DNA of 64,000 bases from Selaginella moellendorffii (lineage: Eukaryota > Plantae > Lycopodiophyta), in assembly GCF_000143415.4 (NCBI RefSeq), contig NW_003314360.1:228284-292283 (forward strand). Direction: 5' to 3'. The first letter of the stretch is position 1, and every line of letters begins with the position of its first letter. Below, piece after piece: positions 1,641 to 58,420 of the stretch. The notes below the pieces were generated by a model that was not told the DNA's origin, searched no databases, and was given only the letters and a program-made list of their open reading frames with translations. Both the position numbers and the translations under genes were made by a program.

Positions 1641-1989
1641 TGATGACTTTCCTTTCGGCCATTTCTATGTAAACCTTGCAGAATGCATCCCTGGACAATC
1701 TATCGTGCATGAGAAAAGCGTACATGGAATATGAGGAGATTAAGGATGCTAGCCAGTTTCTTAGAAGGATGCCTGAAATGATTCCAGTATAATGCGAGCC
1801 ATGATTTCATTGATGTAGTTACAGTACTCTCAATACCGTACTATTACAAACAACTTATAGAATTTGTTGGCGTGGATGAAAATTTCCATAAAAGTATGGT
1901 GATCCTGCAGCAATTTCAACTGGAAGATGTACAAATAAAATAAAATTTCTTTGCTACTTGTGCTCTTTGAGTTTACACCGAAAACACCA

Positions 1990-2305
1990 ATGGCCCTTGC
2001 AGGATTTGTGTACAGTTTAACTTGCTTGATTGTCTTATTGTCGTCTCCGGGTGTTGCTATTGATCCGTTTGAGACGGTGATTCCCGACTGGGTCGATTCA
2101 TTTCATTTCCCGCGACCTTCACTTCAGGTAGCTTACGGATCGCAGAACGTGAGCATAGAAAGGCAGTTTTCGCCGGCTGAAGTTCTTCTACAGCCCAAGG
2201 TGAGCATCCGGCAGGACTCTCTTCGGTGTCCGTGTGTTCACAGAGAATTATGATTTGGGTTATCCTGTAGATGGAGTCTTCTTCACCTCCACTCTGATTG
2301 TATAA
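1990..2305 (+). pseudogene. PEBP (FT/TFL1/MFT-family) pseudogene with an internal deletion
   Basis: Near-identical to 28875-29559, but at ~2208-2211 it jumps from QPKVSI to the last-exon RTLF sequence. About 370 bp is lost, including the DPDxP and GxH motifs, with a frameshift. Confidence 0.9.
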
Positions 2306-2579
2306 CTGATGAACTCGTATGAATAAATTGAGTAGACATGATCCCAATATCCTCTCCTCCATTGCAAGCATATATGACTTTCCATCCTCCACCTTGAGTG
2401 GTAAGATCGTCACTTAAACTTAACTATATCAAGAATGTGGATGGAAATTATCAACTCACGCTCGCTTCACCATAGCACCCATAGTTCTTATACAATTTAT
2501 AAAAAAAATCTTTTATTTATTAAATTTTTCAGCCATACACTAATAATATTATGAGAATATTCTGAAACACAATGGATAA

Positions 2580-3968
2580 CGAAATGGCTGGCAGGCCTCT
2601 GACTGAACGCTGGTCACTCCGTGCGAACTAGAAGACAATCTTTGTAGAAGCATTGAGATTCTACGTCCCCTCCATGGTATTCACAGGGGAAAGAACTTCT
2701 GTATGTGGGTTGATTGAATTCGTGCGACGAAGGTTGGGGACGTTACTTGGGTTGTCAAGTTTGATAAGTGGCAGCGAACGAGTACGTTAAGTTCTTCTTT
2801 CTGAGTCATATGCATTATTTTATTGCTGGTGCATTCCAGACGAAGAGCTGAATTATCGCTTGACAACTGCCATGTTTCAACTAAGGTGGTGTTCTTATCG
2901 CTTTGTTTTGGTGGAGTTATTCAGCTTTGCTTCTCTTACAGGATGACATGCCTTATGCGAGTGTATTACGAATCCATGAAACGTGGCTTGATGGTTATGC
3001 GGGAAGACCTTTGGTCCTAATGTAGGAGGCACAGCCAACGATAGGTGAAAAATAAGCAGGGACGAGTCATCGTCCAGGTAACCGTGTAAAAGTTATCAGC
3101 TCTGGAATCTAATTTTGTGGATGCTGTTGTGTGTGCAGTGGCATTCCAGGTTTACTGAGATTGATATATGGTGAAGAAACACGAGACAGATGCTCACTCA
3201 GGCCAGTGGTGCGACGATCCATGGTCGAGGTCGACTTACAACGCGTTGAAAAGGAGCCAGTTCTACACTTAATGGAATGGAATGTGGATCCAAGCGCACA
3301 CGCGTGTATATTCCACCTATGATCGACAAGTCTTTAATAATCCATTTGCGACAAGACAAGGGTATGTTCACGCATTTATACTCATTCATTCATGGTGTAG
3401 AACAGGGTGACATCAGATCAAAAGCGAGAACCAGACACACTCAGGTCGGAACGACAGGGATGAAAACTCATCAGTAGGAATGGAGAGGTTTGTATTCTGG
3501 ATTTAAATCGCGTCTCTCAACAAGCTTTCGAAAATGGAAGGAGAAGCTTTCATTCCAAAGGTTCAAGCTTTTGTTTACAGAAGTATCACGGCTGCTTTCG
3601 TCTGTTTCAGTAAAACCAGAGAAGAGAAACACTGCTACTAACTTTGACGCATAAGTTCTTTGAGGACTTTTTTAGTTGCAAAAAGAAGTACACACGCACA
3701 GCTGGAGGTAACGTTTTCTCGTGTTTCTTTCCAGTGTAAAACTCCGGGTCCTGTTCTTTCCTCCAGCTCCAAATCGAAGCACAAGCCAAGAACATGTTTA
3801 AGTTCCAGCAAAAGATTGAGGTGAACCAACAGTGCAAGAAGGAGCCCTGCAGTCGACAGTAACCGAGGCTGCAGCTAGTGTCACGTCAGACGCCAAGTGC
3901 CTTGAACCGGCCTCCAAGAAATCCAAGATTTCGGAGGAGCAAAGGCAAAATTCTATCGATGATGGGAG
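2580..3968 (+). pseudogene. Unidentified degraded multi-exon gene remnants
   Basis: Short GT..AG intron-like spacers (e.g. ~3561-3610, ~3708-3734) separate exon-like segments containing stops; no recognisable family motif. Confidence 0.3.
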
Positions 3969-4089
3969 GTATTAGTTGTTTCTTGTCAATGGCATTGCCT
4001 CTAGAAAAGGAAAGCACTCACCATGCCTCTGATAATAACTGTCATCTATTCATTTAATTTTCAGCTAGAACTTTCAGAGATCATGGACC

Positions 4090-4887
4090 TTATCGTTTCT
4101 TCTTGCTGCGCTCTTTGGAAGGTTTGGTTGCCTCCTCTTTGGCGTTGTGGTCGGCTTCAAGTCTCGCAAGCTGCAAATCAAACAATACTGTTGTGAGGAT
4201 TCCTTCTTGAGACACCACTTTACCTTGTCAAGGACGGGTTTAAGTTCTCTGTAGCATGTCTTTGCCAATTCAAATCCATCCTTCCTGAGCTCCTGATAGA
4301 TGCAAAGAGCATGAAGGATGAGCAAAAGAAAACCCGCGTCATCACCTTTCCAGTGTGTTGGATGTGATCGTAAGGTGCCAATACATGATCGTCCAAGAGA
4401 AAAAATCTCTCAGCGCTTCTCCAGGCTGAAAGACAAATCAATCACAAAACGGGAAGATGAACTACTATCATCACTCACCAAAGGTGTTTGTTGAGAATCA
4501 GCCAGGCCCAGCTCGACCTGTATTTGATCGATCTTTGATCATTTGATCGTCAGCCTCTTGCTAAGTTTTGTTGCATCCTAGAATACAAAAGGAAACATAC
4601 AAGTTTTCTTACATCCTTCTTTTTTACTACCTTGCCATCATCCTCTTTGTCTGTTCCTTTACTAATCAATCTAGCATCACTGTTGTCATTATTAGTTTCA
4701 CCATACTCCTCACTAACTTTAATTCACTCATTTTGTGTTTCCTGCTTGAAACATTAGTATGAGGCTAGATAATAGCTTGATCATAAAAACACTAACTTCA
4801 AGTTTATTTAGGTCCAGTGAGACCCTAAACCCTAAACTCACTTCTCTTTTGCCAACTTCTTTCATACATCCATACAGAAACAAAGTA
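4090..4887 (-). pseudogene. KLHDC4/Kel3-like kelch-repeat (DUF4110) gene, 3' fragment, copy 1
   Basis: Encodes HTGK/ELRKDGFELAKTCYRELKPVLDK and TLFLYGCMKEVG; duplicate of 16141-16953; frameshifted. Confidence 0.75.
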
Positions 4888-6099: not shown

Positions 6100-7755
6100 T
6101 TGCTGGATTCCGAGCGGGAGGAGCAAATCCGACGCCAGCAGGACGAGCGGGCAGCCCGCTACGCACGACGTCAGGCGCTTTCTACGCCACTTTCGTCTCC
6201 TCGCATAAGACCCTCGTCACCAAGCGAGGAGCCTTCTTCCCCACCAGATCTTGACGAGGAAGTTTGGGGCGAGTACCAATCGTCCCCACCACCAGCCCCT
6301 CCTCCACCCATCTCAGTTTCTACTCCTCCAAGAATGAGTGGCGCTGGCGGATCCGGAGGTGCACCACCACCGCCGCCGCCGCCAATTCCTCCTCTGCCAG
6401 GACGGCATTTTACACGCATGAGGTATCCTTCTTTCTCGCCCATCGCGGGCAATGATGCGGGCAATGATGCGGACGCACATCTCAATTCCTTTGAGACTGT
6501 TGGCATCGCCAAACAAGAAGCCGATGAAGCCGATCGCCTTCGGTTCTTCCCTGCTACACTCCAAGACGCTGCTCTGGAGTGGTATCTCCAAGCCCAGCGT
6601 TCTGCACCAGCCAGTATTGCGACCTGGGACCTGCTTCGATCAGCCTTTCTCGCTGCTTTCCGACCCGTGGGATTCGCACAGCGAGTTAGTGAGGAACTTA
6701 ACTACATTCGATTGCTACCAAACGAAAGCTTACAAAGTTTTATCATCCGGTTTCGGCGACTAGTCGCTAAAAAAGACCCTCCTCCCAGCGAGGACGATCA
6801 GGTTCGCTTCTTCACGAACGGCCTACCTCCTGAATTGGCTTTCTTCACGAAGGGCCAGACCCCCACAACACTTGCTGAGGCTATTTCCACGGCTTCCAGT
6901 TGGGAGCAAGCACGCGTGAGCATGGCTCGCTTCCAGCAGCCTTTCTACTCTGTTCCTTCAGTGCTTGGCGGTCCACCAGTGATCCCGCCAACCTTTCCTT
7001 CCCTGCAAACATCAGCAGCATCACAGCCATATTCTTCGCTTACTGACCCAGCAACCTTACCTTTTCCTGGAACCGTCGATTACAGCCGCCTCCAGCAGCA
7101 TGTACTTCCTGCTGCGGCTCCTTCCTCTTCAGCTCTGCCACAGTCGCAAGAAATTTCCAAAGTCCGTGATGACTTGGAAACACTCACCAAGAAAATGTCC
7201 GAGCTTCAGCTTAACTGGATTCGAGGAGTCCAGACACCTCCTCAGCCTGTTACTGAACGTGAGAATATCTGGTGTACTCGTTGCAACGGATATGGACATT
7301 ATCCCAGCGACTGCCCAAGTCCTGCACCAGCTCGAGTCAAGTGCCAGCACTGCGGAAGAAATAATCACAGATCAGAGCACTGCATATATAAACCCGGTAC
7401 CTCAGCTCAGCCAGCTCCTCGCATGCCTGCACGTCCCAGCTACCACGTCCAGCCCCAGCTTCTTCAAGATCCATCGCCACCTCTGGTTCTACAAGGTTAC
7501 ACACCCGATCTAGTACCCGTTTATGCAGCAGCTCCAGCACGAACGAGTAATGTACCTGGAAGGGGTCGAGCTCGACGTATTATCTGCTTTCGTTGCAGAC
7601 AGCCCGGCCATATCGCTCCCGAGTGTCCGAATGCACGAGCACCAGTTGAGTACCAACCCATCTGCGGCATCTGTAACACGCAAGGTCTTCATGCCCAAGA
7701 CGACTGCCCTCACCGTCTTCGTCGCGATCAAGGCGGACAAGGCAATCCTCCATGA
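6100..7755 (+). CDS. gag: Gag with four CCHC-type zinc knuckles (first ATG at 6334)
   Basis: Retrotrans_gag-like LQDAALEWY...TWDLLRSAFL...FTNGLPP; knuckles CTRCNGYGHYPSDC, CQHCGRNNHRSEHC, CFRCRQPGHIAPEC and CGICNTQGLHAQDDC. Confidence 0.9.
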   Translation: MLDSEREEQIRRQQDERAARYARRQALSTPLSSPRIRPSSPSEEPSSPPDLDEEVWGEYQSSPPPAPPPPISVSTPPRMSGAGGSGGAPPPPPPPIPPLPGRHFTRMRYPSFSPIAGNDAGNDADAHLNSFETVGIAKQEADEADRLRFFPATLQDAALEWYLQAQRSAPASIATWDLLRSAFLAAFRPVGFAQRVSEELNYIRLLPNESLQSFIIRFRRLVAKKDPPPSEDDQVRFFTNGLPPELAFFTKGQTPTTLAEAISTASSWEQARVSMARFQQPFYSVPSVLGGPPVIPPTFPSLQTSAASQPYSSLTDPATLPFPGTVDYSRLQQHVLPAAAPSSSALPQSQEISKVRDDLETLTKKMSELQLNWIRGVQTPPQPVTERENIWCTRCNGYGHYPSDCPSPAPARVKCQHCGRNNHRSEHCIYKPGTSAQPAPRMPARPSYHVQPQLLQDPSPPLVLQGYTPDLVPVYAAAPARTSNVPGRGRARRIICFRCRQPGHIAPECPNARAPVEYQPICGICNTQGLHAQDDCPHRLRRDQGGQGNPP

Positions 7756-10700
7756 CGTTCCACTGCTCCAAGAAATGACCCAGTGATCGACACCCAAGTC
7801 GTCCAGCCCTGCTATGGCACGATTCCTGCCCTCGCCGTGGCCCATGCGGCTCAAACTGCACACGCAATGGCACCCAGTTCCTCCCTACGGCTACTCAAAC
7901 GCCAAGCACGGCGTCTACCTGCAACACCACAGCCCACCCATGCCGCTCCTGCCTTTCCTCCAAGCGCGTACCCTGATCCGGCAGTTGCTCCAAGACCCGC
8001 AATCCAGTTTGAAGCGCTTCCCTTTCCGCCATCGCAGGACCCTAATTCTGGAACTGCCACTTCATTCAATCACGCTTCACTCAGCGATCAAGAAGTTATC
8101 GCCGACAAGAAAAAGAGATATCGCCGTCTGGAGACACGTCCGTACGATATTTTGGGGGATCTGGAGCATCCAGCTCCTGTTCCTGTTCACTTTCACCTGC
8201 GCATGGCGGATCAACGCCGCGTTCAGCCGCTTGGCATCATCACGGGTGTCAAGACGGTCATTGCGGGAATTATTTTCTTTGTCGATTATGTCGTTCTCAG
8301 GATGAACGATGGCAATCTGACTTATCCACTCCTTCTTGGGCGACCCTGGCTTCTCCAAGCTCGCGCACGCCATGACTGGGCCACTGGCTTCTTGGAGATA
8401 GGTGATGGCAATTTTTCCCGCAAAATCCAGGTTCACTTTCAGCAGCGCCCTGAAGCTAGTTTCGAGGTTGAATCAAACGACTCGGATTCCTCCAACGACG
8501 AAGATGATCCAGATGAGGATGCTCCTGCTCTTTCTACTGAACCTTCGCTTACATCCCAGACTACAGCTGAGGTTCAAGCTTGGCTTTTCTGCGGCTCAGT
8601 GACAGTGGAGCCGTCCCTACCTTTGCACCAGGTTCTCGTTGCTGATCACAATGCTCCAGAACCTGCATCCCCGTTCGAGCCTCCTGCAACGACTTCCGTC
8701 AACGTTGGTACCTCCAGCGAACCTCGTGAACTCCAAGTCGGCGCCGACTTATCTCCCTTGGACCTCCAGCAGTACCAGAAGCTCTTCCATGCATACAAGG
8801 ATATCTTTGCATGGTCTTATGCGGATTTACGTGGCATCAATCCTGAGCTCGGGCAACACCGCATCGAACTCCAGCCGGACGCGCAGCCGCGACGACAGAG
8901 AATGTACCGCATGAATCCAAACTACGCTCAAGCTGTTCGTGAGGATCTGGATAAGATGCTTGCTGCGGGTTTCATCTACCCTGTCGACGCGACGGATTGG
9001 CTCTCTCCCATCGTCGTCGTTCCAAAAAAGAATGGGAAGCTGCGTGTATGTGTCGACTACCGCAAGCTTAACGCTGTGACACGCAAGGACGGGTTTCCCC
9101 TTCCCTTCACGGATGTGGTGCTCGACAACGTAGCTGGACACACGACTTACTCGTTCCTTGATGGCTTTAGTGGCTATCACCAGGTTCTTATCCATCCTGA
9201 TGATCAACATCTCACCTCGTTTATCACTCCGTGGGGATGTTTTTGCTACAGGGTGATGCCATTCGGACTCACGAATAGTCCCGCGACTTTTCAACGAGTC
9301 ATGCAAGCAGCCTTTCAACGGCTCCTTGGAGATTTTCTGGAAGTTTTTCTTGATGATTTCAGCGTTTATAGCGACGCTATATCTCATTGCATAAAACTCG
9401 AAAAATGTTTTGAACGTTGCCGTTTCTATGGCATTTCTCTAAATCCCTCCAAGTGTTCGTTTGGCGTTCCCCGTGGCATTCTTCTCGGTCGAGTGGTCTC
9501 CCGGGAAGGATTAGCTGTGGATCCAGCTAAGGTGGCTATCGTGAAGAACCTGGAACCACCGCGCGTTAAAAAAGATCTTCAAGCTTTCTTGGGCCATGTC
9601 GGCTACCATCGCCGCTTTATCTACGATTTCGCCACTAAAGCTTTGCCTCTGACGAAACTCTTGAAGGCCGGCGTGCCTTATGAGTGGACACCAGCGTGTC
9701 AGGACGCATTTGAGCTTCTCCGGGGAGCTCTGATCACTGCTCCGATTTTAGCCGTTCCTGACTGGACAGTTATTTTCCACGTCCACGTGGATGCTTCTGC
9801 CTTTGCTGTCGGCGCTGTTCTTTGCCAGCCGCGAGAGGGCATCGATCACCCTATTTTCTACGCAAGCCGCCAACTCTCCTCTGCCGAGCGCAACTACTCC
9901 GCCACTGAACGGGAAGGCTTAGGCATGATCTTTGCTATTCAGAAGTATCGCCACTACCTGTTGGGCACACACTTCAAATTTTTCGTGGATCACCAAGCCC
10001 TCAAGTACCTCGTCAACAAGCCTTGCCGCACAGGTCGCATATCTCGCTGGCTCATCATCCTCCAGGAATTTGACTTTGAGGTGATCCTGAAACCCGGCCG
10101 CGCTCATGCCATGGCCGATCACCTTTCACGATTGCCAGGCCCTCCCTCCTCCCAGGACCTTGAGGATGACCCAGCTGATGCAACTCTGTTTTCTTGCGAC
10201 ACCACGGATCTCTTTGCGGTCGACGCTGTTCCCGAATGGTATCAAGGGATTGCAGATTATCTGGCTACCGGCGAGTTCCCTGCTGACTTTACGGTCACCG
10301 CACGCAAGCGACTTATTATCCAGGCTCGTCCATACTCTCTCCTGCATGGCCAGCTCTACATCCTTGGCCGTGACGATGTTCTACGCCGTTGTATCCTTCC
10401 TCATGAGGTGGAGACAGTCATAGCATCATGCCATGACTCACCTTATGGCGGCCACTTCTCCTCACAAAGAACAATTCGGTTGGTTCTCCAAGCAGGCTAC
10501 TGGTGGCCAACGCTTCACAAGGATGTTGCTGCCTACGTTCGGACCTGCGATCCCTGCCAGCGTACTGGTCGCCCAACTCGTCGTGATCTGATGCCGCTTA
10601 ATCCTCTACTTCCGGTGCTTCCTTTTGAGAAGTGGGGCATCGATTTTGTGGGACCGATCAAGCCAGCCAGCCATCCTTCCCGTTGCCGCTACATTCTCGT

Positions 10701-11544
10701 GTGCACGGACTATGTCACGAAGTGGGCCGAGGCAGAAGCTCTCACGGAAGACACAGCTGCCAAGGTTGCGACTTTTCTTTACAAGAACATCATCACGAGA
10801 TTTGGCTGCCCTTTGGAGCTGGTGAGCGATAGAGGTACTCCCTTTATCAATCAAGTGATCGCGACCTTGGTGGAGAAGTATGGCATCGCTCATCGTAAGT
10901 CCACTCCCTATCACCCTCGTGCTAACGGACAGGTGGAGCGCACCAATAAGATACTGTGCGACATTATCACGAAGCTTGCCAGTGCTTCTCGCACAGATTG
11001 GGATCAACGCTTGTTGGATGCTCTCTGGGCATACCGCGTTGCTTACAAGGTCACCACCAAAGCTTCACCGTTCCAGCTTGTTTATGGACAAGAAGCCATC
11101 CTACCACTCGAGCTTGAGATTCCATCTCTCCGTATGGCTGTCGAGCACAACTTGGACTGGGACAACACTCTTCAAGCTCGACTGGACACACTTCTCCAAC
11201 TCGACGAGCGTCGACTTCTCGCTTTCCAAGCTCGCGAAGCACTTCAGAAGCGCCGCAAAGTCTGGTACGATCGTCATTTGCGTGCTAAAAATTTTTCTGC
11301 TGGTGATCAGGTTCTCCTTTACGATAGCAAGCACTGGAAAAAGCCTGGGAAACTCCGTATTCGCTGGCTTGGCCCATATCGCATTGTTGAAGTTTTTACC
11401 AATGGCTCAGTCCAGCTTGAAGATCTTAGTGGGAACTTGTTACCTACTCGTGTTAATGGAGCTCGCCTGCGCAAGTACCATGAGCGAGATGAAGCTGCCG
11501 TGGAGCTGTGTGCTCCGGGACGGAGCCCAATAGGTGGGGGGTGA
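7756..11544 (+). CDS. pol: Pol (partial protease, RT, RNase H, integrase), in frame with gag after one TGA
   Basis: LLLGRPWL (protease C-terminus); LRVCVDYRKLN, MPFGL and FLDDF (RT); VDASAFAVGAVL (RNase H); H..H..CDPC, IDFVG, SDRG, NGQVERTN and GPY (integrase). Confidence 0.93.
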   Translation, partial: RSTAPRNDPVIDTQVVQPCYGTIPALAVAHAAQTAHAMAPSSSLRLLKRQARRLPATPQPTHAAPAFPPSAYPDPAVAPRPAIQFEALPFPPSQDPNSGTATSFNHASLSDQEVIADKKKRYRRLETRPYDILGDLEHPAPVPVHFHLRMADQRRVQPLGIITGVKTVIAGIIFFVDYVVLRMNDGNLTYPLLLGRPWLLQARARHDWATGFLEIGDGNFSRKIQVHFQQRPEASFEVESNDSDSSNDEDDPDEDAPALSTEPSLTSQTTAEVQAWLFCGSVTVEPSLPLHQVLVADHNAPEPASPFEPPATTSVNVGTSSEPRELQVGADLSPLDLQQYQKLFHAYKDIFAWSYADLRGINPELGQHRIELQPDAQPRRQRMYRMNPNYAQAVREDLDKMLAAGFIYPVDATDWLSPIVVVPKKNGKLRVCVDYRKLNAVTRKDGFPLPFTDVVLDNVAGHTTYSFLDGFSGYHQVLIHPDDQHLTSFITPWGCFCYRVMPFGLTNSPATFQRVMQAAFQRLLGDFLEVFLDDFSVYSDAISHCIKLEKCFERCRFYGISLNPSKCSFGVPRGILLGRVVSREGLAVDPAKVAIVKNLEPPRVKKDLQAFLGHVGYHRRFIYDFATKALPLTKLLKAGVPYEWTPACQDAFELLRGALITAPILAVPDWTVIFHVHVDASAFAVGAVLCQPREGIDHPIFYASRQLSSAERNYSATEREGLGMIFAIQKYRHYLLGTHFKFFVDHQALKYLVNKPCRTGRISRWLIILQEFDFEVILKPGRAHAMADHLSRLPGPPSSQDLEDDPADATLFSCDTTDLFAVDAVPEWYQGIADYLATGEFPADFTVTARKRLIIQARPYSLLHGQLYILGRDDVLRRCILPHEVETVIASCHDSPYGGHFSSQRTIRLVLQAGYWWPTLHKDVAAYVRTCDPCQRTGRPTRRDLMPLNPLLPVLPFEKWGIDFVGPIKPASHPSRCRYILVCTDYVTKWAEAEALTEDTAAKVATFLYKNIITRFGCPLELVSDRGTPFINQVIATLVEKYGIAHRKSTPYHPRANGQVERTNKILCDIITKLASASRTDWDQRLLDALWAYRVAYKVTTKASPFQLVYGQEAILPLELEIPSLRMAVEHNLDWDNTLQARLDTLLQLDERRLLAFQAREALQKRRKVWYDRHLRAKNFSAGDQVLLYDSKHWKKPGKLRIRWLGPYRIVEVFTNGSVQLEDLSGNLLPTRVNGARLRKYHERDEAAVELCAPGRSPIGGG

Positions 11545-22719: not shown

Positions 22720-25700
22720 CTACTTAAGAATTTCAGCATAGACTGTATTCACAGTGTAAAAGTGTTGATCATGTGGTATAAGATTGCCTTGAAGGGGGGT
22801 TGCAAGCACTTGAACACGAAGTTGTTCAGGTGATCTACACCTTGACAGAGCAACATAAAGTTGACCATGTGTGAAAACAGGTTGGGGGAGGTAAATGCCA
22901 ACACGGTCGAAAGTTTGGCCTTGGGCTTTAGAAATAGTTAAGCAATAACCCAGACGAACTGGGAATTGTCTTCGAGACATCTTGAAAGGGATTTCAACAT
23001 CAGAAGGTGTAAGGGTAATACGTGGAATAAAAACTCGCGATCCCTTGAATTGTCCTGTGATAATTTCACAATCTAAAACGTTTTGAGATGCTTGCTTGAG
23101 AATGAGGCGTGTGCCATTGCATAAACCAATTTGTGGAGATATGTTCCTAAAAAGAATCAAAATCACATTTTGTTTTAGAATTAATTTGTGTGGTGGTAGT
23201 CCCAATGGGGTGATTGAATTTAAGAATTCAATTGGGAACTCTTCCGGTGATCTGAGTCAACTGTGTCAATGCTCAAATAAATATATGGATCACCTGGTAG
23301 TCTTTCAACAATGTCATTATTTATTCTGAATGTGTCGTCATTGAGTGGGGTGAGAATAACCTTTGATGCAGCTGTATAAGTATTTATAATATCATCGGTA
23401 TTTGGGAAAACAAAGTTTACAACAAATGTAGTGATAGATAATGCATGTGGTATTTTGATAATATCTGGTGGGAGACATGGCAACTGTAAATTACTATGCC
23501 AAGCTTGAGAAGCCATTCAGAAAAACAAAGATTACTTGAACGCATGTTTTTTGTTAATGTTAGTGTTGTAAAGAGTGACCATAGTCTATTCATTTTAACT
23601 GAGTTTGAAATAATAAAGGTTCTATGGCCATGGGGAACAACAGGAAGGGTTTGACGAAAGTCACCACTTGTAATCACTATAACGCTTCCAAATGGTTTAA
23701 AATTACATTTGAGATGTTTTAAACATTTATCAACCACAGAGAAAGCATGTGTATGAACCATACTAATTTCATCCATATGAGAACATTTGCTTGTTTAATG
23801 GTTTTTCCAACATCACTATTAATTGTTAAAGCAGAGATAGAAGTTTCATTTAAAGGAACAGGAAGTTTAAAAGTCATATGTGCTGTTTGACCATATTTTA
23901 GCAAAATGCTTGCAATCCCAGTCCATGCCATACTGATTACTTTTATTTTTTTTAATTGTAATGCTGTAATGATGGTATTAAGTAGAAAAGTTTTTCTAGT
24001 ACCACCAGGTCCATCAATAAAGAAACATTGATGTTGGTTAGTATCAATGGCATTTATAATGAGTTCAAAAATATAACGTTGTTCATAACTGAATTGATTT
24101 ATGTTTGCATTTATTTGGTCTTGTGATGGGTCAAGGATCTTTGTATTAAGCATGTGTTTGATAATAGGAGTAAGAGTTGGAGTGGTAAACCAAAATCACA
24201 ATTAGATTTATTGTGTAGTTGGAATTTTGAATTAATATCGACTAAAGCAATGTCAAAATAGTTTATGTCATTTCTAGCATAATCCTCAGACATATCAATT
24301 TTGAATTGATCCCATAATAGATTTGGATCTTTTGGTGAACAATACAAACAAATAAAAATAAATAACTGTCTTAATTGGGATGGCATTTTAAAAGTAGAAG
24401 CTTCTTGCATGTAGTGTTGCCATTCTGAATCATCTGCTAAAAGTCCCATTGCCATAGCTGCTTGTTTAAAAGAGGAGAAAGTAACACCTTCGACAGTACA
24501 TATATCCTCAAATGATATAGCACCTTTTTTATAGAGTAATATAAGCCGTAAGTGGTATAACTCACTATTAGAAGAAGATATGGAATACATTCTTGGTATG
24601 AGTTTAGTTTTTCGCTGGTGTAATTGCCATTTATGAAAGGATTTGTTATATGTGTAATGTAATGGAATTTGAGCATATGTATATTGCCTTGCATTAGTAT
24701 TTTGCATGTTTAAATTGAACCATTGTGTAAGCATTGTTCCATTTTGAGTGGCTCTTTCTAGTGCTTCTTTTTCATGACCTGGTCTGAAATAAACGTTTTG
24801 AAAATTGGGTAAATGAACTGGAAGACGTATAATAGTTAGTGATTTATCATGCATATGAAACTTAAATATACGCCACATGGCTTTAGGAGCAGAAATATAT
24901 CAAGCATTAACAAAACTTGAGATTTCGTCCCAATTTAAAGTCCCTCGTTCTTCAGATGCAGTTAAAAATTCTAATGTTGCACAGTCATAACCTTTGTATA
25001 CATATTGAAATAAATATTTAATACTTTTAATAGAAGCGCAGATCTCTACATTGATGTGTGCTTAATATTTCTTACAAAGGTATTTATTATAAGGAACAAC
25101 CCATCTGTTGTCAATAGTACAACCATTTTTTATGAAAGTGTGCCCGTTATTGGGACGGTAGTAATTAGGATAACCATCAACACAATAAATGGTTTCAACA
25201 TTAAATTCTTTTGGATAATTCTTAGAGCATTTGTTATTTTCCATGCAAGGGCTTCTAGGATTTAAATTACCACATGGACCATGTATCATATGATTTATAA
25301 TTATGTTATGCAATTCTGGTTCTAACAGTGGGTGTGGCAACTGTGCAGTGATAAATTCATCAACTGAGTCTCGATTTCTTATCTTATCTTCGCTTGATAA
25401 CATTGCTAAGAAATGACAATGAGGCAAACCTCTTTTCTGGAATTCAATAACATAAACATATGCGATGCACTTCCCAAAAATTCCTTTGATACTTATGTCA
25501 TGTAGGAATTTTTTAAGCTTTAAGTTGAAAACTCTTGAAATAAGAGCAGGTCGATCCTCAGGTGATTCATTCAGCTGTAAGTTTTGCACAATTTCAGGCC
25601 ACTTTGGGTTGCATGTAAATGTAATAAATAAGTCAGGTTTTCCAAAATGTGTGACAATAGCAATAGCATCTTGATAATGTTGTTGCATTGCTCGTGGGCT

Positions 25701-27050
25701 ACCAGGAAATGTAGAAGGCAAAATTACAATTTTTCCAGGTTCAACATTATTAGTAGCAGCTCTATTGCTAACATAGTCCATAAGACCTGTGTAGTAATCC
25801 ACTTTTAAGTGTTTTTGATGAGTGCGAAAGAAATTAAAGTTGTTAGATTCAACCTTTACATAAGCATCAACTATAAATTGTTGAGTGAGTTTCCCAGCAT
25901 GTAGCAATTGATCATAAAGGAAAGAGTTGCCAATGCTATCTCGTTGAGATAATCGATATGCATAGTACTGGAGTAGCATTATATGCGACTCATTGTAATA
26001 GATTTTTTCATGCCAACCTTTATCACCAAATGGTAAAAGTAAAGGATAAACCATAGGATCACAATTTTCATTACGAATAGAGATTTTTATTGGCTGTGAA
26101 TTATATGGATGTATGCATATTTCTCTGTCAAGAGATGGCTCACCCTCATCAATAGCGAAAACAATAGCAACATCATTAGTCTGTGGCAAATTATAACGAT
26201 GTAGATTAGTACTTTCACTTTTAACAATCATGTAAACACCACGTTTTGGGGTTCCATTGCAAATTGAGCGATGTTGTTCTTGTGATTCAAGATTATACAT
26301 CATTTGAAAAGCTTGTGCATACGGGTTTATTATTCTTAGCAAGTTATCTAATTGTAATAATAAATTAGAATCACAATTTGTGTTGAATGGGTTTTGCTTT
26401 CTAATATTTGTAGCCTCAGAAGCGTCAAGCATGTAAAGTTGTCCATATGATGGTGGCACATTAGCTGCAGGATATGCTGAAGCAATTTTGTGATAAATTT
26501 GACCATGTATTCTAAAGCAATATGGGCCTTTACCACTTAAATTATCAATATTAGCACCCATTGATGCAAAAGCCAAAGCACTGTTGAAATTTCTTATGTT
26601 AATTTTAAAATTGGGGTTTCTATTTTCATTAAAAAGCATACGCAATATAGTAGGTAAAGATGAAAGCTGGGGAAGGGAAACCTTTCCATTCTGGCAGCAC
26701 ATTAATCTTGACTCATTTTCAAAATGTAATGCACCACAAAAGACACATACGGATGATATATTTCCAATATTAAACAGTTGTATTGTATGGTCATTATAAT
26801 TCTTTTGATGTGCTAATTTATAGATAGTATAACTGTGATGATTACATGTATTTGTATTAGTTTCATTAGCATTTTCAAGGTTTATATTTGTATGACCTTC
26901 ATCAGCATATGCTATGTTTGTATTAGCATTGTCAAGATTTGAAGTAATTTTTGCATTAGCATGTTCAAGGTCTAGATTAGTTTCTTCATTACTATATGCA
27001 AGGTTGTTGTGAATATGATTATATGTGCTAGTGTCAATAGTTGGAGGCAA
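22720..27050 (-). pseudogene. Helitron Rep/PIF1-helicase, frameshifted
   Basis: Rep motifs PDLFITFTCNPKW and VIEFQKRGLPHCH; helicase motifs GPGGTRKT (Walker A mutated), DEISM, GDFRQTLPV, QFPVRLGYCLTISKAQGQT and GQLYVALSR, spread over six ORFs. Confidence 0.95.
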
Positions 27051-27692
27051 ATGGTGACGTATGCCTCTTAATACTTCACAAAGCGAGGCATATTTGCTAG
27101 GGATGATAAATGAGATGAAATAACCTATCTAGTGTCAAAGCACTTATCTTAAAATTTTCAGAGATTCTAAGTAAAAGCCAGAACTTGCCTTCTTCTTACA
27201 CTGGAAAAAAAATTAAAAAAAATTAAAAACGAAGACTATACAATGAGAGCACAATCTATACACACCTTAATCTGTAAACAAAAGAGACTAATCTAGCAAC
27301 CAATAAAACCTAGACACAGGACTGGCACACCTTTTCCAGGGTGTGGTGAGCAACTGTGAGAGGTGGGTGGGGTTTGCAAGTTAGAGAACTCACCTTGGGC
27401 TTGTTCTCTCTCGCAAAAGGACAGCGACTGCAAACTCTCTGATGGTTCTGGCTGTGAAGGCTGGCTCTGGCTTCAGCTCTGCCACTGGATAGCATCCACA
27501 AACCCAAATGAAGACATTTCAAAATTTCACAGCACACAAAAATCCAGATTGTTGGGGTTGGGGGCCAAATTAGCGGCTGCCGGGCTGACTGTGAACACAG
27601 ACCTTTGCAGGAAGAAGCACAATTGCTGCGATTGCCACTGATCCGGCAAGCAAGCGTTAGCTCAATTGCGGCAGGGCATCCAGGGCGAGCTA

Positions 27693-28520
27693 AGAAGAAC
27701 GGGCACGGGGGCAGGACACCACTGGCACACGTGTTGCTGTGCCTTCTTCTCCCGCCCCACGCGGCTTGGCCGCCTCCCATTGGCCGGGAGCAAACATCAG
27801 CAAGTCTGTGAACAGCATCAGGTTATTCCGAGAGCCACCACCCGACGCCGCTGCCTTTTTCGCCACGTCCCTGAATTCCCTCGCTCTCGCCTTTCGAGCT
27901 TTGTCGCTAAAGATCCTCACAATGGCCTCAGCAATCTCCTCCCGCTTCACAAACGCGTCGCAGCTCCTCCCGTCCGAAACTTCCACCCCGATGCGGCACC
28001 TCTCCGCCATGATCTTGCGGTTGAGCCCCTGCTCGTATATCCGAGGCCAGCAGATGATCGGCACGCCGCTGGAGACGCTCTCCAGGACCGAGTTCCATCC
28101 GCAGTGGCTCACGAATCCAGCCACTGCCCTGTGCGCCAGAACTTCTCTCTGCGGCGCCCATGAAACCACCAGGCCTCGTCCCTTGGTCCGCTCGACGAAG
28201 TTCTTGTAGAAGTCACTGTTCTTCACCAGGACTGTCGTGTCGCCCTCGTCCACGAACTGGGGCGGCCTGACTGTGAGCAAGAACGGCACCTTGCTCGCCT
28301 CCAAACCGAGCGCGAGCTCCTCGAATTCCTCCTGCGAAAGCTTCGCTATGCTGCCGAATGCAACATAGAGGACTGAGTCTGGCTCCTGCGTGTCGAGCCA
28401 GTCGAGGCATTCAGAAGAACGGGCACGGGGGCAGGACACCACTGGCACACGTGTCGCTGTGCCTTCTTCTCCCGCCCCACGTGGCTTGGCCGCCTCCCAT
28501 TGGCCAGGAGCAAACATCAG
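27693..28520. repeat. 108-bp direct repeats (27693-27800 and 28413-28520) flanking the UGT fragment
   Basis: AGAAGAACGGGCAC...CAAACATCAG occurs twice with 3 mismatches, 720 bp apart. Confidence 0.95.
27801..28412 (-). pseudogene. Captured C-terminal half of a family-1 UDP-glycosyltransferase
   Basis: CLDWLDTQEPDSVLYVAFGS and the PSPG box WAPQREVLAHRAVAGFVSHCGWNSVLESVSSGVPIICWPRIYEQ; GC-rich against the AT-rich RepHel. Confidence 0.93.
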
Positions 28521-28874
28521 AAAAATTTCTCGCGCAACCATGGCTACCGACCCTGGCCCGGGCCTGGGATCCAACGGCCGGCGAGCCTCCCCACTATCGC
28601 TTTATATGTATAGATTAAGGATGCTAGCCAGCTTCTTAGAAGGATGCCTGAAATGATTCCAGCATAATGCCAGCCCATGATTTCGTTGATGTAGTTATGT
28701 TCCTTGATGTACTCTCGATACCGTACTATTACAAGCAGCTTATAGAATTTGTTGGCGTGGATGAAAATTTCCACAAAAGTATGGTGATCCTACAGCAATT
28801 TCAACTGGAAGATGTACAAATAAAATAAAATTTCTTTGCTACTTGTGCTCTTTGAGTTTACACCGAAAACACCA

Positions 28875-29559
28875 ATGGCCCTTGCAGGATTTGTGTACTG
28901 CTTAACTTGCTTGATCGTCTTATTGTCGTCTCCGGGTGTTGCTATTGATCCGTTTGAGACGGTGATCCCCGACTGGGTGGATTCGTTTCATTTCCCGCGA
29001 CCTTCACTTAGGGTAGCTTACGGATCGCAGAACGTGACCATAGAAAGGGAGTTTTTGCCGGCTGAAGTTCTTCTGCAGCCCAAGGTGAGCATCACGAATG
29101 CTGGAAATAGAGACCTTTTTACACTTGTAATGGTGGATCCTGATCCTCCCGGTCCACAAATTCCCATTTTGAGGAACATTCTACACTGGATTGTAGTTAA
29201 TATCCCGGCTCAATCTACCAGTAAGCTCTTATTTCCAAAAGAAATCAGGACCGCTTGAGTACATTTATAATGAATTTGCAGATGTATCAGAGCAAGGAGA
29301 TCATCTTGCCCCTTATTTATCTCCTACACCAGTCCAGGGAGTCCACTGTTATTATTTTCTTCTCTTCAGACAGGTGAGAAAGACTTTGAGCAGTCCTCGG
29401 ATGACTTGAACATTGTGATTGCAGAAGAAACAAATTCATGCTGGAAGTCTGTCTGGAAGTCTTAGCAGGACTCTCTTCAGTGTCCGTGTGTTCACAGAGA
29501 AATATGATTTAGGTTATCCTGTAGATGGAGTCTTCTTCACCTCCAGAGTGATTATATAA
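28875..29559 (+). CDS. PEBP (FT/TFL1/MFT-family) protein with N-terminal signal peptide; exons 28875-29220, 29282-29373, 29425-29559
   Basis: FTLVMVDPDPPGP..LHWIVVNIP, YLSPTPVQGVHCYYFLLFRQ and RTLFSVRVFTEKYDLGYPVDGVFF; the frame is kept across GT-AG introns (191 aa). Confidence 0.88.
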
Positions 29560-30499
29560 CTGATGAACTCGTATGAATAAATTGAGTAGACATGATCCCA
29601 ATATCCTCTCCTCCATTGCAAGCATATATGACTTTCCATCCTCCACCTACCTTGAGTCGTAAGATCGTCACTTAAACTTAACTATTTCAAGAATGTGGGT
29701 GCACGCTCGCTTCACCATAGCACCCAGTAGATTGAAATTTTTTCTTTCTTTTATTTATTGTGTTTCAGAATATTCCCAGAATATTATTAATGTATGGCTA
29801 CAAGGGGAAAAATTTAATAATTTCTTCTTCCTATGGATCCCCGTGAATGATCTCCTTGTCGTGAGTGTAATGTAGAGCTGAATCTGGCCGTCTGGGAGGA
29901 TCCAAGTTGTACATGCATACTCCACGTTCATGAGTGAGCCTGGCAATTGCTGAAGAAGGGCGTGTTGTTACGAGTTCAGCTGCGGCTGTCGACCTTGTTG
30001 AGTCGGAGAGGGCCAGTCTTGGGATTAGCAAGGATGAACTGGTTTGGTTCCTTAAAGTCTTTCCACTTAGGTCTCTCCTTGAGCAGCTTACCACACTGAT
30101 AGCGAGGTGTATACTGTAGTCTAAGCATTCTCACACAGGAATGCCTAGAAACTCTTAGCTTGCTTACACCGCAAGCCGCTAGCATTTTATGAGAAAGTTG
30201 GTATAAGATTGTTTCGGGTGCTAGTGTTCTTGCATAAGTCGCTGGAATTAAGCTTTGCTTCCATCACCAAATACAAGAGACACTGGCCGATTTCTTGTGG
30301 CTCAGGTGCTACCCAATGTCACTAATGTAGAGATCCCAAAGCATACTATGATGAGACCACTTAATCCATCAAGATTCATGCTCCTTATATCAACTAGTTT
30401 GATATGGACTAAAATATGGATGCAATGCCTCAAAGTAGCAGTGACTTTTTTAAATAAGAAACAATATCAACAGAATACAAATGAGGAAAAAAACTGAAT

Positions 30500-55365: not shown

Positions 55366-57327
55366 CTAGTTTCTCTCTTGCTCCAAGACGCTGGCGAGTA
55401 GGAGGTTTGGGGCCGCCACCCTCGAACCCAGTCCCATCACTTCACTCGCGCCAAAGGCAGCATTCTTGAGATCACGTGCTTCTCGACAAGCGCCCAGAAA
55501 GCTCGTCCAATTGGCATAATCTGCTGTCCAAGGCATGGCGGCGATCAAGTCCCGGGCTTCTTCCAGGTATCCGGACCTGCCCAGAAGATCAATGAGACAG
55601 CCATAGTGCTTCCTTGTCGCTGCCAGGCCATGATCAAAGGCCATGGATGTGAAGTAGCTCCGGCCATCATAAACTTTTCCCTGGTGGCTACACGCAAGCA
55701 GCATCGCCACGAAGCACGTCTCATTCGGGGGCTCCATTGTCTTCATCCTGTGAAACATCTCGATCGCAAAGGGGGAATTCCCACACTGGACGGATCCCAC
55801 TAGCAAGCACGTCCATGCGATGGAATCCCTCACGGGCATTCGATCAAAGAGATCCACAGCGCTGTAAATCTGCCCATTTTGCGCGAATGCAATCAACATT
55901 GCCGTCCAGGACACCAGTGACCTGTGAGGAATCGCATCAAACACTCCCTTGCATTGCTCAAGATGCCCATTTTGGGCATATGCCGCGAGCATCGACGTCC
56001 ACGTAAACGCATTTGATTGAGGCATTTGGTCGAGCATCTTCTCTGATTCTTCTAGATGCCCGTTCTGGGCATATGCCGATAGCATTGCGTTCCAGGCCAC
56101 GAGATTCCACTGGGGCATGGAATCAAAGACGTAGCGTGCTTCTTCAAGATTCCCATTTGCGGCATATACCGTTACCATTGACGTCCACGTAATAAGATTC
56201 CTCTCCTCCATTCTCTCGAAGAGTTTTTGTGCTTGTACGACTTGCCCGGTCTGGGCATACCCCGCCAGCATGGCATTACACATGGCAAGATCTGGCTCGT
56301 CAATCAAATCAAACATCTCCACCGCCTTGCCGACGTGGCCATTCTGGGCATACGCAGCCAGCAACGACGTCCAAGAGAAGAGGTCAACGCGTGGCAAAGA
56401 GTCAAACAGCTTGACCGCATCTGTGAGATTCCCTTGCTGTCCGAGCGTCGCCACAAGGGAGCTCACACACCCAATGCCGTACACTGGCATCTTGTGGAGT
56501 ATGGCCAATGCTCTATCCGTATGACCATGCTGGGCATATGCCACGAGCATCGTGCCCATGGACACCACGTTTTGCTGGGGCATCTCGTCGTAAAGTCTCT
56601 TGGTTGTCTCTAGATCGTCGTGCTGGGCAGATGCCGAGAGGACAACGTTCCACGACACGAGATTTCTCTCTGGCATCGCGTGGAAGATCTCGCGAACTCG
56701 ATCGAGCTCAAGACTGTGCACATACGCTGTGACCAAAGTGTTCCAAGAGACAATCGTTCGTTCCGGCATTTGATCGAAGAACTCTTTGGCTTTTGGATGA
56801 TCGCCGAGCTGGGCAAATGCGGCAAGCATAGAGTTCCAGCAACCGACATCTCTCTCTGGCATCTCGTTAAACAATCTGGAAGATTCGCTAAGATCGGAGT
56901 TGTGGGAATATGCAGCTAGCATGGCACTCCACGCGAGAAGGTCGTGGAATGGCATCTCGTCAAAGGTTTGCTTTGCGTGATCGACATGCCCTCTTTGGGC
57001 ATATCCTGCAAGCAGCGAAGTCCACGATATCAAGTCCCTGCCGGGCATCTCATCAAAGAGTTTCTTGACTTCGTCCACGTCGCCGCACTGGCTGTATACC
57101 GCCAGCAGTGTGTTCCACGAAACGAGGCTCCGCTGCGGCATGCCGTCGAAGAGCTGTTTAGCGTCGCCCAAGAGCCCATTACGGGCATATGCCGAGAGCA
57201 TCGCATTCCAAGAGATAAGATCGCGCTGTGGAATCCTGGCAAAGAGCAGGCGAGCTTCGTCGATTTGGCCATTGCGAGCGAGCGCACAGAGCTTGGAAGT
57301 CCAGGCAACTGTATCGGCATGCGTCAT
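55366..57327 (-). CDS. PLS-class PPR protein (mostly 31-aa short repeats) with E domain and no DYW
   Basis: About 16 repeats of ..FD.MP.R.LVSW..ML.AYAQ.G; FVAMLLACSHQG, HYGCLIDLLGRSG and WTSFLGACR; intronless, 653 aa. Confidence 0.93.
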   Translation of the reverse strand: MTHADTVAWTSKLCALARNGQIDEARLLFARIPQRDLISWNAMLSAYARNGLLGDAKQLFDGMPQRSLVSWNTLLAVYSQCGDVDEVKKLFDEMPGRDLISWTSLLAGYAQRGHVDHAKQTFDEMPFHDLLAWSAMLAAYSHNSDLSESSRLFNEMPERDVGCWNSMLAAFAQLGDHPKAKEFFDQMPERTIVSWNTLVTAYVHSLELDRVREIFHAMPERNLVSWNVVLSASAQHDDLETTKRLYDEMPQQNVVSMGTMLVAYAQHGHTDRALAILHKMPVYGIGCVSSLVATLGQQGNLTDAVKLFDSLPRVDLFSWTSLLAAYAQNGHVGKAVEMFDLIDEPDLAMCNAMLAGYAQTGQVVQAQKLFERMEERNLITWTSMVTVYAANGNLEEARYVFDSMPQWNLVAWNAMLSAYAQNGHLEESEKMLDQMPQSNAFTWTSMLAAYAQNGHLEQCKGVFDAIPHRSLVSWTAMLIAFAQNGQIYSAVDLFDRMPVRDSIAWTCLLVGSVQCGNSPFAIEMFHRMKTMEPPNETCFVAMLLACSHQGKVYDGRSYFTSMAFDHGLAATRKHYGCLIDLLGRSGYLEEARDLIAAMPWTADYANWTSFLGACREARDLKNAAFGASEVMGLGSRVAAPNLLLASVLEQERN

Positions 57328-57453
57328 GAACCAAAAGAAGGATCACATCCAGCGCTGCCCAATACGAGCACTGGAACTTGTGTGCGAGCTCTGGAAATGC
57401 CAAGGTGATAGAAGTCATCAACCATAGATTGCGAGGAATTAAAAGGAGATTTC

Positions 57454-58245: not shown

Positions 58246-58420
58246 AACGTTCCTCAAGAACCCTAGCCGAGACCTCTCGTATATATACACGGGTTGTCAA
58301 AAGGGTTGTCACAAAGGTGGCCAAATGCCGTTACTGGGCATTCTTATGCTTGCTTGCCCTAATTCTCGACCCAAATCTCCCGCCAGGTTTTAGGGTTCTT
58401 ATGCTAGGTTTTGGGGGTCA
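58246..58420. promoter_or_regulatory. Compact divergent promoter region with telo-box-like motifs
   Basis: 175 bp between head-to-head ATGs; AACCCTAG at ~58259, TATATA at ~58280 and TTTAGGGTT at ~58389. Confidence 0.5.

What the first reader, a model, noticed from the sequence alone, without database searches (positions are those of the whole stretch)
28875..29559. Divergent FT/TFL1/MFT-family PEBP with a predicted secretion signal
Seen: the N-terminus MALAGFVYCLTCLIVLLSSPGVA|IDPF looks like a cleavable signal peptide and is kept in the pseudogene copy. The position equivalent to FT Tyr85/TFL1 His88 (Trp in MFT) is Ile, and GxHR is GVHC. The canonical introns near TLVM and LHW are absent, and an intron follows LFRQ. 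Known: plant FT/TFL1/MFT proteins lack signal peptides, whereas animal PEBP4 is secreted. Inference: a distinct, possibly apoplastic PEBP subfamily.
Basis: partly seen in the sequence, partly recalled or inferred. Interest (0 to 1): 0.75.

Follow-up and report, generated by a model that had tools for sequence, protein, structure and literature searches.

The report
Secreted-type PEBP gene in Selaginella
This spikemoss gene encodes a relative of the flowering hormone FT with an export-signal-like leader; it belongs to an old branch of the family (liverworts to ferns) that the papers I could search do not describe, and this copy has lost one otherwise invariant pocket residue and may be decaying.

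Summary
Window 28875-29559 (+) is an intact three-exon gene of Selaginella moellendorffii, in GenBank as 'TF1-like protein, partial'. It encodes a PEBP-fold protein with a 23-residue hydrophobic leader, Ile102 at the FT-Tyr85/TFL1-His88 site, and GVHC in place of GxHR.

The gene sits in a well-supported clade (99/97) of leader-bearing PEBPs from liverworts, Selaginella, Equisetum and ferns. An AU test rejects grouping this clade with land-plant MFT/FT/TFL1 (p 0.0017).

The clade shares its own gene structure: no introns at TLVM or LHW, and one after LFxQ. I found this structure in Marchantia, Sphagnum and Klebsormidium. Members are rich in N-glycosylation sequons and are under purifying selection (Marchantia dN/dS 0.19).

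So a distinct, secretory-type subfamily is supported. Export itself is untested.

GVHC is not a family trait. It is a private CpG-to-TpG change (R138C) at a residue invariant in 76/76 relatives. The two sister copies are dead, and three RNA runs gave no reads. This copy may be decaying.

The scan has noted secreted PEBPs before on other DNA of this genome (s1-420264, s1-398904, s1-346912). This report adds the spread beyond lycophytes.

The parts
28604..29954 (+). Duplicated unit shared with the two other copies of this young gene trio (271 bp upstream of the ATG to about 395 bp past the stop)
   Evidence: blastn: window 28604-29093 / 29465-29726 matches window 1729-2208 / 2211-2481. Window 28604-29025 / 29020-29954 matches L001 7118-7524 / 10510-11447.
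28875..29220 (+). Exon 1 (residues 1-115 plus the first base of codon 116). It holds the leader, IPDWVD, DPDPP and LRNILHW.
28875..28943 (+). Signal-peptide-like leader, residues 1-23 (predicted cut after Ala23)
   Evidence: Hydrophobic core at residues 6-17, KD 2.83; Gly at -3, Ala at -1, Pro at -4. AF2 shows helix 4-17 at pLDDT about 64, apart from the core. Conserved in both decayed copies.
29031..29039 (+). N-x-T sequon at Asn53 (N-V-T). A second sequon, Asn116 (N-V-S), spans the exon 1/2 junction.
29178..29180 (+). Codon of Ile102, the site of FT Tyr85 / TFL1 His88 / MFT Trp
   Evidence: Aliphatic (I/V/L) in 9 of 10 clade members; Phe in one Adiantum protein.
29221..29281 (+). Intron 1 (61 nt, GT..AG, phase 1). 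Same alignment position as in SmPEBP3-1, Marchantia, Sphagnum and Klebsormidium. Probably canonical intron 3 with the acceptor 15 nt further upstream.
   Evidence: The homology to intron 3 is an inference.
29282..29373 (+). Exon 2 (residues 116-146), holding GVHC and LFRQ
29347..29349 (+). Codon 138, TGT (Cys), where every relative has Arg. The paralog has CGT.
29374..29424 (+). Intron 2 (51 nt, GT..AG, phase 0) right after LFRQ. The acceptor is tandem NAGNAG (29424 or 29427).
   Evidence: An intron at the same position is present in SmPEBP3-1, Marchantia, Sphagnum and Klebsormidium.
29425..29559 (+). Exon 3 with the stop codon (29557-29559)
29576..29581 (+). AATAAA, a possible polyadenylation signal
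1729..2481 (+). Decayed copy of the same gene. The leader and residues 1-73 are fused to residues 159-189; the PEBP core is deleted.

Best explanation
The locus is an intact three-exon gene of Selaginella moellendorffii for a secretory-pathway type PEBP.

Shown here:
- The protein has the FT/TFL1-like PEBP fold.
- It carries an N-terminal add-on of 23 residues with the build of a cleavable ER signal peptide.
- It belongs to a clade of leader-bearing PEBPs found in liverworts, Selaginella, Equisetum and ferns. I call this the 'WVD clade' after its IPxWVD motif.
- The clade has its own conserved exon-intron structure and is separate from the land-plant MFT/FT/TFL1 genes.

Inferred:
- The leader takes the protein into the ER and is cut after Ala23. 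The mature protein then starts exactly where cytosolic PEBPs start.
- Family members are N-glycosylated and released to the apoplast or vacuole.
- There the conserved pocket (Asp88, Asp90, His104, His137) binds a small anionic ligand or a protein partner. One candidate partner is a secreted serine protease or carboxypeptidase, as with yeast Tfs1 and its carboxypeptidase Y.
- The protein cannot act through cytosolic 14-3-3/FD as florigen does.

This particular copy belongs to a young trio (dS about 0.1). Two of the three are visibly dead. This one has a private CpG-to-TpG change, R138C. That change removes the invariant Arg that salt-bridges the second Asp of DPDxP. The copy may therefore be impaired or on its way to becoming a pseudogene.
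For: Fold and family.

Leader. No alternative start exists. The leader is retained in both decayed copies.

Clade: 99/93 in tree 1 and 99/97 in tree 2. The AU test rejects a WVD + land-plant MFT/FT/TFL1 clade, p 0.0017. One fern genome (Adiantum capillus-veneris) holds a canonical MFT, a leaderless relative and WVD proteins side by side.

Gene structure: the same three exons occur in SmPEBP3-1, Marchantia polymorpha, M. paleacea and Sphagnum. The LFxQ intron also occurs in Klebsormidium, while Parasponia MFT has the canonical layout.

Sequons: 1.74 versus 0.22 per 100 residues, p 1e-8, with three conserved positions.

Selection:
- Marchantia orthologs: dN/dS 0.19 overall, 0.42 in the leader, 0.16 in the rest.
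- Window copy versus paralog: 0.25, binomial p 0.0007.

R138C: Arg is invariant in 76/76 relatives, and the paralog codon is CGT. The role of this Arg is described in PMC8793217.
Against: No dedicated signal-peptide predictor could be run. The n-region has no Lys or Arg.

There were zero RNA-seq reads over the gene in about 12% of each of three runs. The tissue is unknown, and I ran no positive-control gene.

The window protein lacks the three sequons conserved in the clade. SmPEBP3-1 has none at all.

R138C, the two dead siblings and the transposon-rich setting all argue that this copy is decaying.

The sequon statistic ignores relatedness among the sequences.

The grouping of the WVD clade with its leaderless relatives is only weakly supported in tree 2 (77/58).
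Confidence: 0.65

Rival explanations
1. This copy is already a non-functional gene. It is unexpressed and inactivated by R138C, and its open frame only reflects its youth. This reading does not contradict the family-level conclusion.
For: R138C hits a residue invariant in 76/76 relatives, through a CpG transition typical of methylated DNA. Both sibling copies are dead: one by internal deletion, the other by a 3-kb insertion plus a stop. No RNA reads were found. The gene abuts a Helitron, with only about 260 bp of its own upstream sequence.
Against: All three exons, both splice-site pairs and the stop are intact. dN/dS against the paralog is 0.25, significantly below 1, although that ratio averages over the whole time since duplication. 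The three RNA runs cover an unknown tissue at partial depth.
Confidence: 0.4
2. The leader is an uncleaved signal anchor. The protein would then be membrane-tethered (ER, plasma membrane or tonoplast) rather than soluble and secreted.
For: The n-region has no positive charge and the hydrophobic core is strong. Related Sphagnum proteins carry an internal hydrophobic segment 20-40 residues from the start, which looks like an anchor.
Against: The hydrophobic core is only 12 residues, too short for a typical membrane span. It is followed by a helix-breaking Pro and small residues at -3 and -1.
Confidence: 0.15
3. It is simply a fast-evolving cytosolic MFT-like gene of lycophytes, as published surveys class all lycophyte PEBPs. 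On this reading the hydrophobic N-terminus has no targeting role.
For: Bennett & Dixon 2021 report only MFT-like PEBPs in bryophytes and lycophytes. An Equisetum member of the clade is deposited under the name 'mother of FT'.
Against: The AU test rejects the clade as kin of land-plant MFT/FT/TFL1. The gene structure differs. Trp at the MFT site is replaced by an aliphatic residue (Phe in one member). The leader and conserved sequons are present from liverworts to ferns.
Confidence: 0.07

Closest known systems
Selaginella moellendorffii PEBP3-1 (SELMODRAFT_165348, UniProt D8QU61; P0006)
   Same: It is the nearest intact relative (45-49% identity). It has the same three-exon structure, a hydrophobic leader, the IPxWVD motif and an aliphatic residue at the Tyr85/His88 site.
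   Different: It keeps GVHR, has no sequons, and has a longer leader region. It lies among ordinary genes on another scaffold. Only automatic annotation exists for it.
Plant MFT / FT / TFL1 (canonical EuPEBPs; structures 1wkp, 1wko, 3axy)
   Same: The fold is the same (TM 0.80). DPDxP, the LHW histidine and the GxH histidine are shared. Sequence identity is 36-41%.
   Different: They have no leader and almost no sequons. They have four exons with introns at TLVM and LHW and none after LFRQ. They carry Trp, Tyr or His at the key site. FT-type 14-3-3 contact residues (Hd3a Arg64, Phe103, Arg132) are not conserved in the clade. They form a separate clade.
Animal secreted PEBPs (mammalian PEBP4; helminth Tm16, PDB 5tvd)
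   Same: The layout is the same: a PEBP domain behind an N-terminal secretion signal (PMC8793217; Tm16 hit).
   Different: The origin is independent, since animal PEBPs form their own clade. Identity is only about 30%. That Tm16 is secreted is my own knowledge, not tested here.
Yeast Tfs1 / carboxypeptidase Y inhibitor (PDB 1wpx)
   Same: It has a PEBP fold (Foldseek E 1e-8). It is a precedent for a PEBP acting as a protease inhibitor, which is a plausible job in the protease-rich apoplast.
   Different: Tfs1 is cytosolic. Identity is 22%.
Leaderless relatives ('NL' group: Ceratopteris, Adiantum, Picea sitchensis D5A9C2, Pinus taeda) and the Sphagnum groups
   Same: They share the 5-residue loop extension (SQEIW-type) and the RN-x-LHW motif. 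In Sphagnum the three-exon structure is also shared.
   Different: Ferns and conifers have no leader and no sequons, and carry Trp or Phe at the key site. The sister relation to the WVD clade has support 93/87 in tree 1 but only 77/58 in tree 2.

Membership tests
PEBP superfamily (Pfam PF01161) | Profile match above the curated threshold | tested here: met
   Exon 1 alone scores 31.1 bits against a cut-off of 24. The database protein P0001 carries PF01161.
PEBP superfamily (Pfam PF01161) | PEBP fold | tested here: met
   AF2 core pLDDT is above 90. Foldseek's top hits are FT, TFL1 and Hd3a with TM 0.77-0.83.
PEBP superfamily (Pfam PF01161) | Conserved quintet Asp71, Asp73, His87, His118, Arg119 (FT numbering; PMC8793217) | tested here: not met
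   Four of the five are present (Asp88, Asp90, His104, His137). Arg119 is replaced by Cys138, while 76/76 relatives keep Arg.
Canonical plant MFT-like | Trp at the FT-Tyr85 site; no N-terminal extension | tested here: not met
   The site is Ile102, and there is a 23-residue hydrophobic leader.
Canonical plant MFT/FT/TFL1 | Four exons with three introns at fixed positions | tested here: not met
   There are three exons. The introns at TLVM and LHW are absent and there is an extra intron after LFRQ. The canonical layout is stated in PMC4995033 and seen in Parasponia MFT.
Canonical plant MFT/FT/TFL1 | Phylogenetic placement within the land-plant clade | tested here: not met
   The canonical clade (96/87) excludes it, and the AU test gives p 0.0017 against joining them.
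FT (florigen) type | Tyr85, Gln140, segment-B YAPGW, and 14-3-3 contact residues | tested here: not met
   The window protein has Ile102, Thr161 and no YAPGW. The equivalents of Hd3a Phe103 and Arg132 are Thr and Ile.
TFL1 type | His88 (and its partner Asp144) | tested here: not met
   Ile102 aligns with His88. The Asp144 partner was not mapped.
Leader-bearing 'WVD' PEBP clade (defined in this report) | Hydrophobic leader, IPxWVD motif, aliphatic residue at 102, 5-residue loop extension, FS(V/I)R motif, three-exon structure | tested here: met
Leader-bearing 'WVD' PEBP clade (defined in this report) | Conserved N-glycosylation sequons (alignment positions near window residues 63, 96, 167) and GxHR | tested here: not met
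   The window protein has two other sequons (Asn53, Asn116) and GVHC.
Secreted proteins (classical pathway) | Cleavable signal peptide called by a trained predictor; experimental secretion | not testable with these tools
   Only heuristics were possible: hydrophobic core length, the -3/-1 rule, and the absence of KDEL/HDEL at the C-terminus.

The most novel reading that the evidence does not exclude
The florigen (PEBP) family has a second, ancient branch in streptophytes that the papers I could search do not describe. Its gene structure (an intron after LFxQ and a 5-residue loop extension) is already present in Klebsormidium. One arm of the branch became a glycosylated, secreted protein that is kept from liverworts through lycophytes and horsetails to ferns. 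No seed-plant member appeared among the hits. This arm would be an extracellular counterpart of the intracellular FT/TFL1/MFT signals.
Probability: 0.5. Interest if true: 0.75.

Novelty: new variant of a known kind. Interest (0 to 1): 0.6.

Why it matters
Surveys of plant PEBPs state that bryophytes and lycophytes have only MFT-like proteins (PMC8408984). A 2022 review lists secreted PEBPs only from animals and bacteria (PMC8793217).

A conserved, leader-bearing, sequon-rich clade with its own intron pattern would change two things. It would add an extracellular arm to a family known in plants for cytosolic, phloem-mobile signals. It would also push the first split of the family back towards the streptophyte algae.

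The clade is directly testable. The one Marchantia polymorpha member found here lies in a conserved neighbourhood, and Marchantia is genetically tractable.

For this locus, the private R138C change is a natural experiment on the Arg that is most conserved in the whole superfamily.

Tried and rejected
- The first listing of cluster members timed out.
- DNA of the Adiantum loci could not be fetched because the sample file is too large. Fern gene structures are therefore unknown.
- RNA evidence: three raw-read RNA-seq runs and one contig set gave no read on the gene. The reads at 28612-28737 come from another copy of a repeat, since they carry two base differences, one deletion and loose ends. 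With one read-laying run allowed, no control gene could be laid.
- Seven of my eight literature searches looked for a plant secreted PEBP, this gene or its relatives and found nothing relevant. The eighth returned a 2022 review that lists secreted PEBPs only from animals and bacteria.
- I did not send a self-joined spliced protein to any tool. The exons were searched one by one by reference. The whole protein was represented by database entry P0001. That entry uses the second NAG acceptor and lacks the last three residues.
- I considered that a transposon carries the gene trio, because all copies share a 5' edge at 28604. I found no terminal structures and left this open.

Full report
**What is there**

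The window is from Selaginella moellendorffii. The product of the gene is 100% identical to GenBank 'TF1-like protein, partial' (P0001, 186 aa).

The gene has three exons: 28875-29220, 29282-29373 and 29425-29559. Its GT..AG introns are 61 and 51 nt, typical of this genome. The second acceptor is a NAGNAG tandem, and P0001 uses the second AG. An AATAAA lies 17 nt past the stop.

The PEBP assignment rests on several results:
- Exon 1 alone passes the Pfam PBP threshold.
- Exon 1 matches TFL1, Hd3a and FT among solved structures at E 5e-17 to 4e-15.
- An AlphaFold2 model built on 77 relatives has pLDDT 86, with the core above 90.
- Foldseek puts FT (1wkp) first, with TM 0.80.

I did not submit a self-joined spliced protein anywhere. 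The exons were searched by reference, and the whole protein was represented by P0001.

All of them are in the sequence.
- Residues 1-23 form a 12-residue hydrophobic core followed by S-S-P-G-V-A, with small residues at -3 and -1 and a Pro at -4.
- The residues after the predicted cut (I-D-P-F-E-T-V-I-P-D-W-V-D) align with the extreme N-terminus of cytosolic PEBPs (D-P-L-V-V-G-R-V-I-G-D-V-L-D). The leader is therefore a pure add-on.
- There is no other in-frame ATG before Met86, and a stop lies upstream. A whole domain cannot be made without the leader.
- In the model the leader is a separate helix (residues 4-17) of lower confidence.
- Ile102 aligns with TFL1 His88 / Hd3a Tyr87, and residues 135-138 are GVHC.
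- There is no intron at TLVM or LHW, and there is one after LFRQ.
- The second copy, at window 1729-2481, keeps the leader but has lost the core.

**Relatives**

An exhaustive HMMER search found 1896 PEBPs. Among the best 150, only nine carry the motif [IVM]-P-x-[WY]-[VLI]-D. One of the nine is a fused gene model. Seven of the other eight have a hydrophobic N-terminal leader; Adiantum P0032 does not.

These relatives are:
- SmPEBP3-1;
- Marchantia paleacea, plus M. polymorpha and Riccia from a profile search;
- Equisetum bogotense, deposited as 'mother of FT';
- two Adiantum proteins;
- a Pteridium transcript;
- one unnamed Logan contig.

The Pteridium entry is a transcriptome ORF with 102 nt of 5' UTR. 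At least one member is therefore transcribed with its leader.

**Phylogeny**

Two maximum-likelihood trees (LG+C20) place the window protein in this 'WVD' clade, with support 99/93 and 99/97.

Land-plant MFT, FT and TFL1, together with most streptophyte-algal PEBPs, form another clade (96/87). An AU test rejects uniting the WVD clade with land-plant MFT/FT/TFL1 (p 0.0017).

One fern genome, Adiantum capillus-veneris, holds a canonical MFT, a leaderless relative and WVD proteins. These are therefore paralogous lineages, not species differences.

The nearest other group is leaderless ('NL'). It includes ferns, Picea sitchensis D5A9C2 and Pinus taeda. Two Sphagnum groups with hydrophobic N-termini also fall here. 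The union of these groups with the WVD clade is supported at 93/87 in tree 1 but only 77/58 in tree 2.

**Gene structure**

This is independent evidence. The same three-exon layout occurs in:
- SmPEBP3-1 (L002);
- Marchantia polymorpha (L003);
- M. paleacea (L006), which is syntenic with M. polymorpha next to a cobW gene;
- Sphagnum magellanicum (L004).

Klebsormidium nitens has the LFKQ intron and the 5-residue loop extension as well, plus one further intron. Parasponia MFT shows the canonical layout, with no intron after LFRQ. That layout is described as characteristic in PMC4995033.

The AU test does not reject a clade of WVD, the leaderless groups and Klebsormidium (p 0.37).

I infer that intron 1 is canonical intron 3 with its acceptor moved 15 nt upstream. 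In Sphagnum the upstream exon ends the same seven residues after 'IP' as in MFT (four in the two Selaginella genes). The five extra residues sit at the start of the next exon. The phase of the window intron (1) matches the phase of FT intron 3, which I take from my own knowledge of the FT exon lengths.

**Secretory signature and constraint**

Leader-bearing members (WVD plus Sphagnum group B) carry 1.74 N-x-S/T sequons per 100 residues. The other 64 aligned PEBPs carry 0.22 (Mann-Whitney p 1e-8, not corrected for relatedness).

Three sequon positions are shared between liverworts, ferns, Equisetum or Sphagnum. The leaderless relatives have none.

Marchantia orthologs give dN/dS 0.19. The value is 0.42 in the leader and 0.16 elsewhere, the usual pattern for signal peptides.

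The 14-3-3 contact residues of Hd3a are not conserved in the clade.

**This copy**

It belongs to a trio that shares a unit from 28604 to about 29954.
- The copy at 1729-2481 has an internal deletion.
- The copy on GL377616 (L001) has a 3-kb insertion in exon 1 and a stop codon.

dN/dS of the window gene against the L001 copy is 0.25 (23 changes, binomial p 0.0007). Against the deleted copy it is 0.42 (p 0.06). The trio was therefore constrained for most of its history.

The window protein departs from near-invariant residues at three sites:
- Glu57 and Pro91, both shared with the paralogs;
- Cys138, which is private. The paralog has CGT and the window TGT, a CpG transition. All 76 aligned relatives have Arg.

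This Arg is one of the five most conserved residues of the superfamily. It salt-bridges the second Asp of DPDxP, and charge changes there alter FT activity (PMC8793217).

The gene also lacks the clade's conserved sequons.

About 12% of each of three RNA-seq runs gave no read on the gene. The tissue is unknown and no control gene could be laid.

The surroundings are rich in transposons. There is a Ty3 element at 6100-11544, and a Helitron Rep gene at 25062-27050 on the minus strand. The Helitron's end lies about 260 bp upstream of the ATG.

**Literature and earlier notes**

In the library I could search, no paper describes a plant PEBP with a signal peptide. Bennett & Dixon 2021 report only MFT-like proteins in bryophytes and lycophytes. 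The 2022 review lists secreted homologs only from animals and bacteria.

The scan itself has noted secreted PEBPs at other places of this genome. One of those notes says the family is known only from lycophytes, and my results extend it to liverworts, horsetails and ferns.

**Verdict**

A distinct, secretory-type PEBP subfamily is supported at the family level, though export is untested. GVHC is a private lesion of this copy rather than a family trait. I put the odds that this particular copy is still functional at about even.

Noticed in passing
window 1729-2481: A decayed copy of the PEBP gene. The upstream 261 bp, the leader and residues 1-73 are joined directly to residues 159-189, so the whole PEBP core is deleted. 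It is 90-93% identical in DNA to the intact gene.
   Followed up: yes
L001 (GL377616.1) 7118-7524 and 10510-11447: A third copy. It is split by a 3-kb insertion in exon 1 and carries a stop at the codon of Ser51, yet keeps the canonical GVHR. Gene models P0002, P0003 and the fused model P0008 (BBE-like enzyme plus PEBP leader) are built on such debris.
   Followed up: partly
window 28604-28737: All three PEBP copies begin their similarity at the same base (28604). RNA reads and contigs from other genomic copies fit only 28612-28737, with a different left flank. A repeat or transposon edge therefore lies here, right against the end of the minus-strand Helitron. Whether a mobile element spread the PEBP unit is open.
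   Followed up: partly
window 24111-28574 (-): A Helitron. A Helitron_like_N Rep ORF lies at 25062-27050.
   Followed up: partly
window 6100-11544 (+): A Ty3/gypsy retrotransposon with open gag and pol (RT, RNase H, integrase).
   Followed up: no
window 55366-58290 (-) and 60839-63329 (+): Ordinary genes: a PPR protein (653 aa ORF), a CCCH zinc-finger/RRM protein, and a DUF630/DUF632 protein.
   Followed up: no
L007 (Klebsormidium nitens DF237413.1) 1001-4103: The Klebsormidium PEBP gene has an intron after LFKQ and the 5-residue loop extension, like the Selaginella, Marchantia and Sphagnum genes and unlike canonical MFT/FT/TFL1. This hints that this layout is the older one in streptophytes.
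   Followed up: partly
proteins P0033, P0344, P0345 (Picea sitchensis D5A9C2, Pinus taeda): Conifers keep a leaderless member of the non-canonical group (RNFLHW, GCHR). The wider lineage is therefore not absent from seed plants. I did not see it named in PEBP surveys.
   Followed up: partly
proteins P0039 (Mesotaenium), P0064/P0218 (Closterium), P0166-P0171 and P0210-P0252 (Sphagnum): Many algal and moss PEBPs carry N-terminal hydrophobic segments that look like anchors or signals. Sphagnum group B also shares two conserved sequon positions with the WVD clade. On the tree the leader state changes at least 5 times.
   Followed up: partly
window 29422-29427: A tandem NAGNAG acceptor (CAG|AAG) at intron 2 allows products that differ by one Lys. 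GenBank's model uses the second AG.
   Followed up: no
L005 (Logan SRR2103708 contig, 1410 nt) 134-748: An uninterrupted 204-codon ORF for a WVD-clade protein with a leader and four sequons, from an unidentified organism. It is either a transcript or an intronless gene.
   Followed up: no
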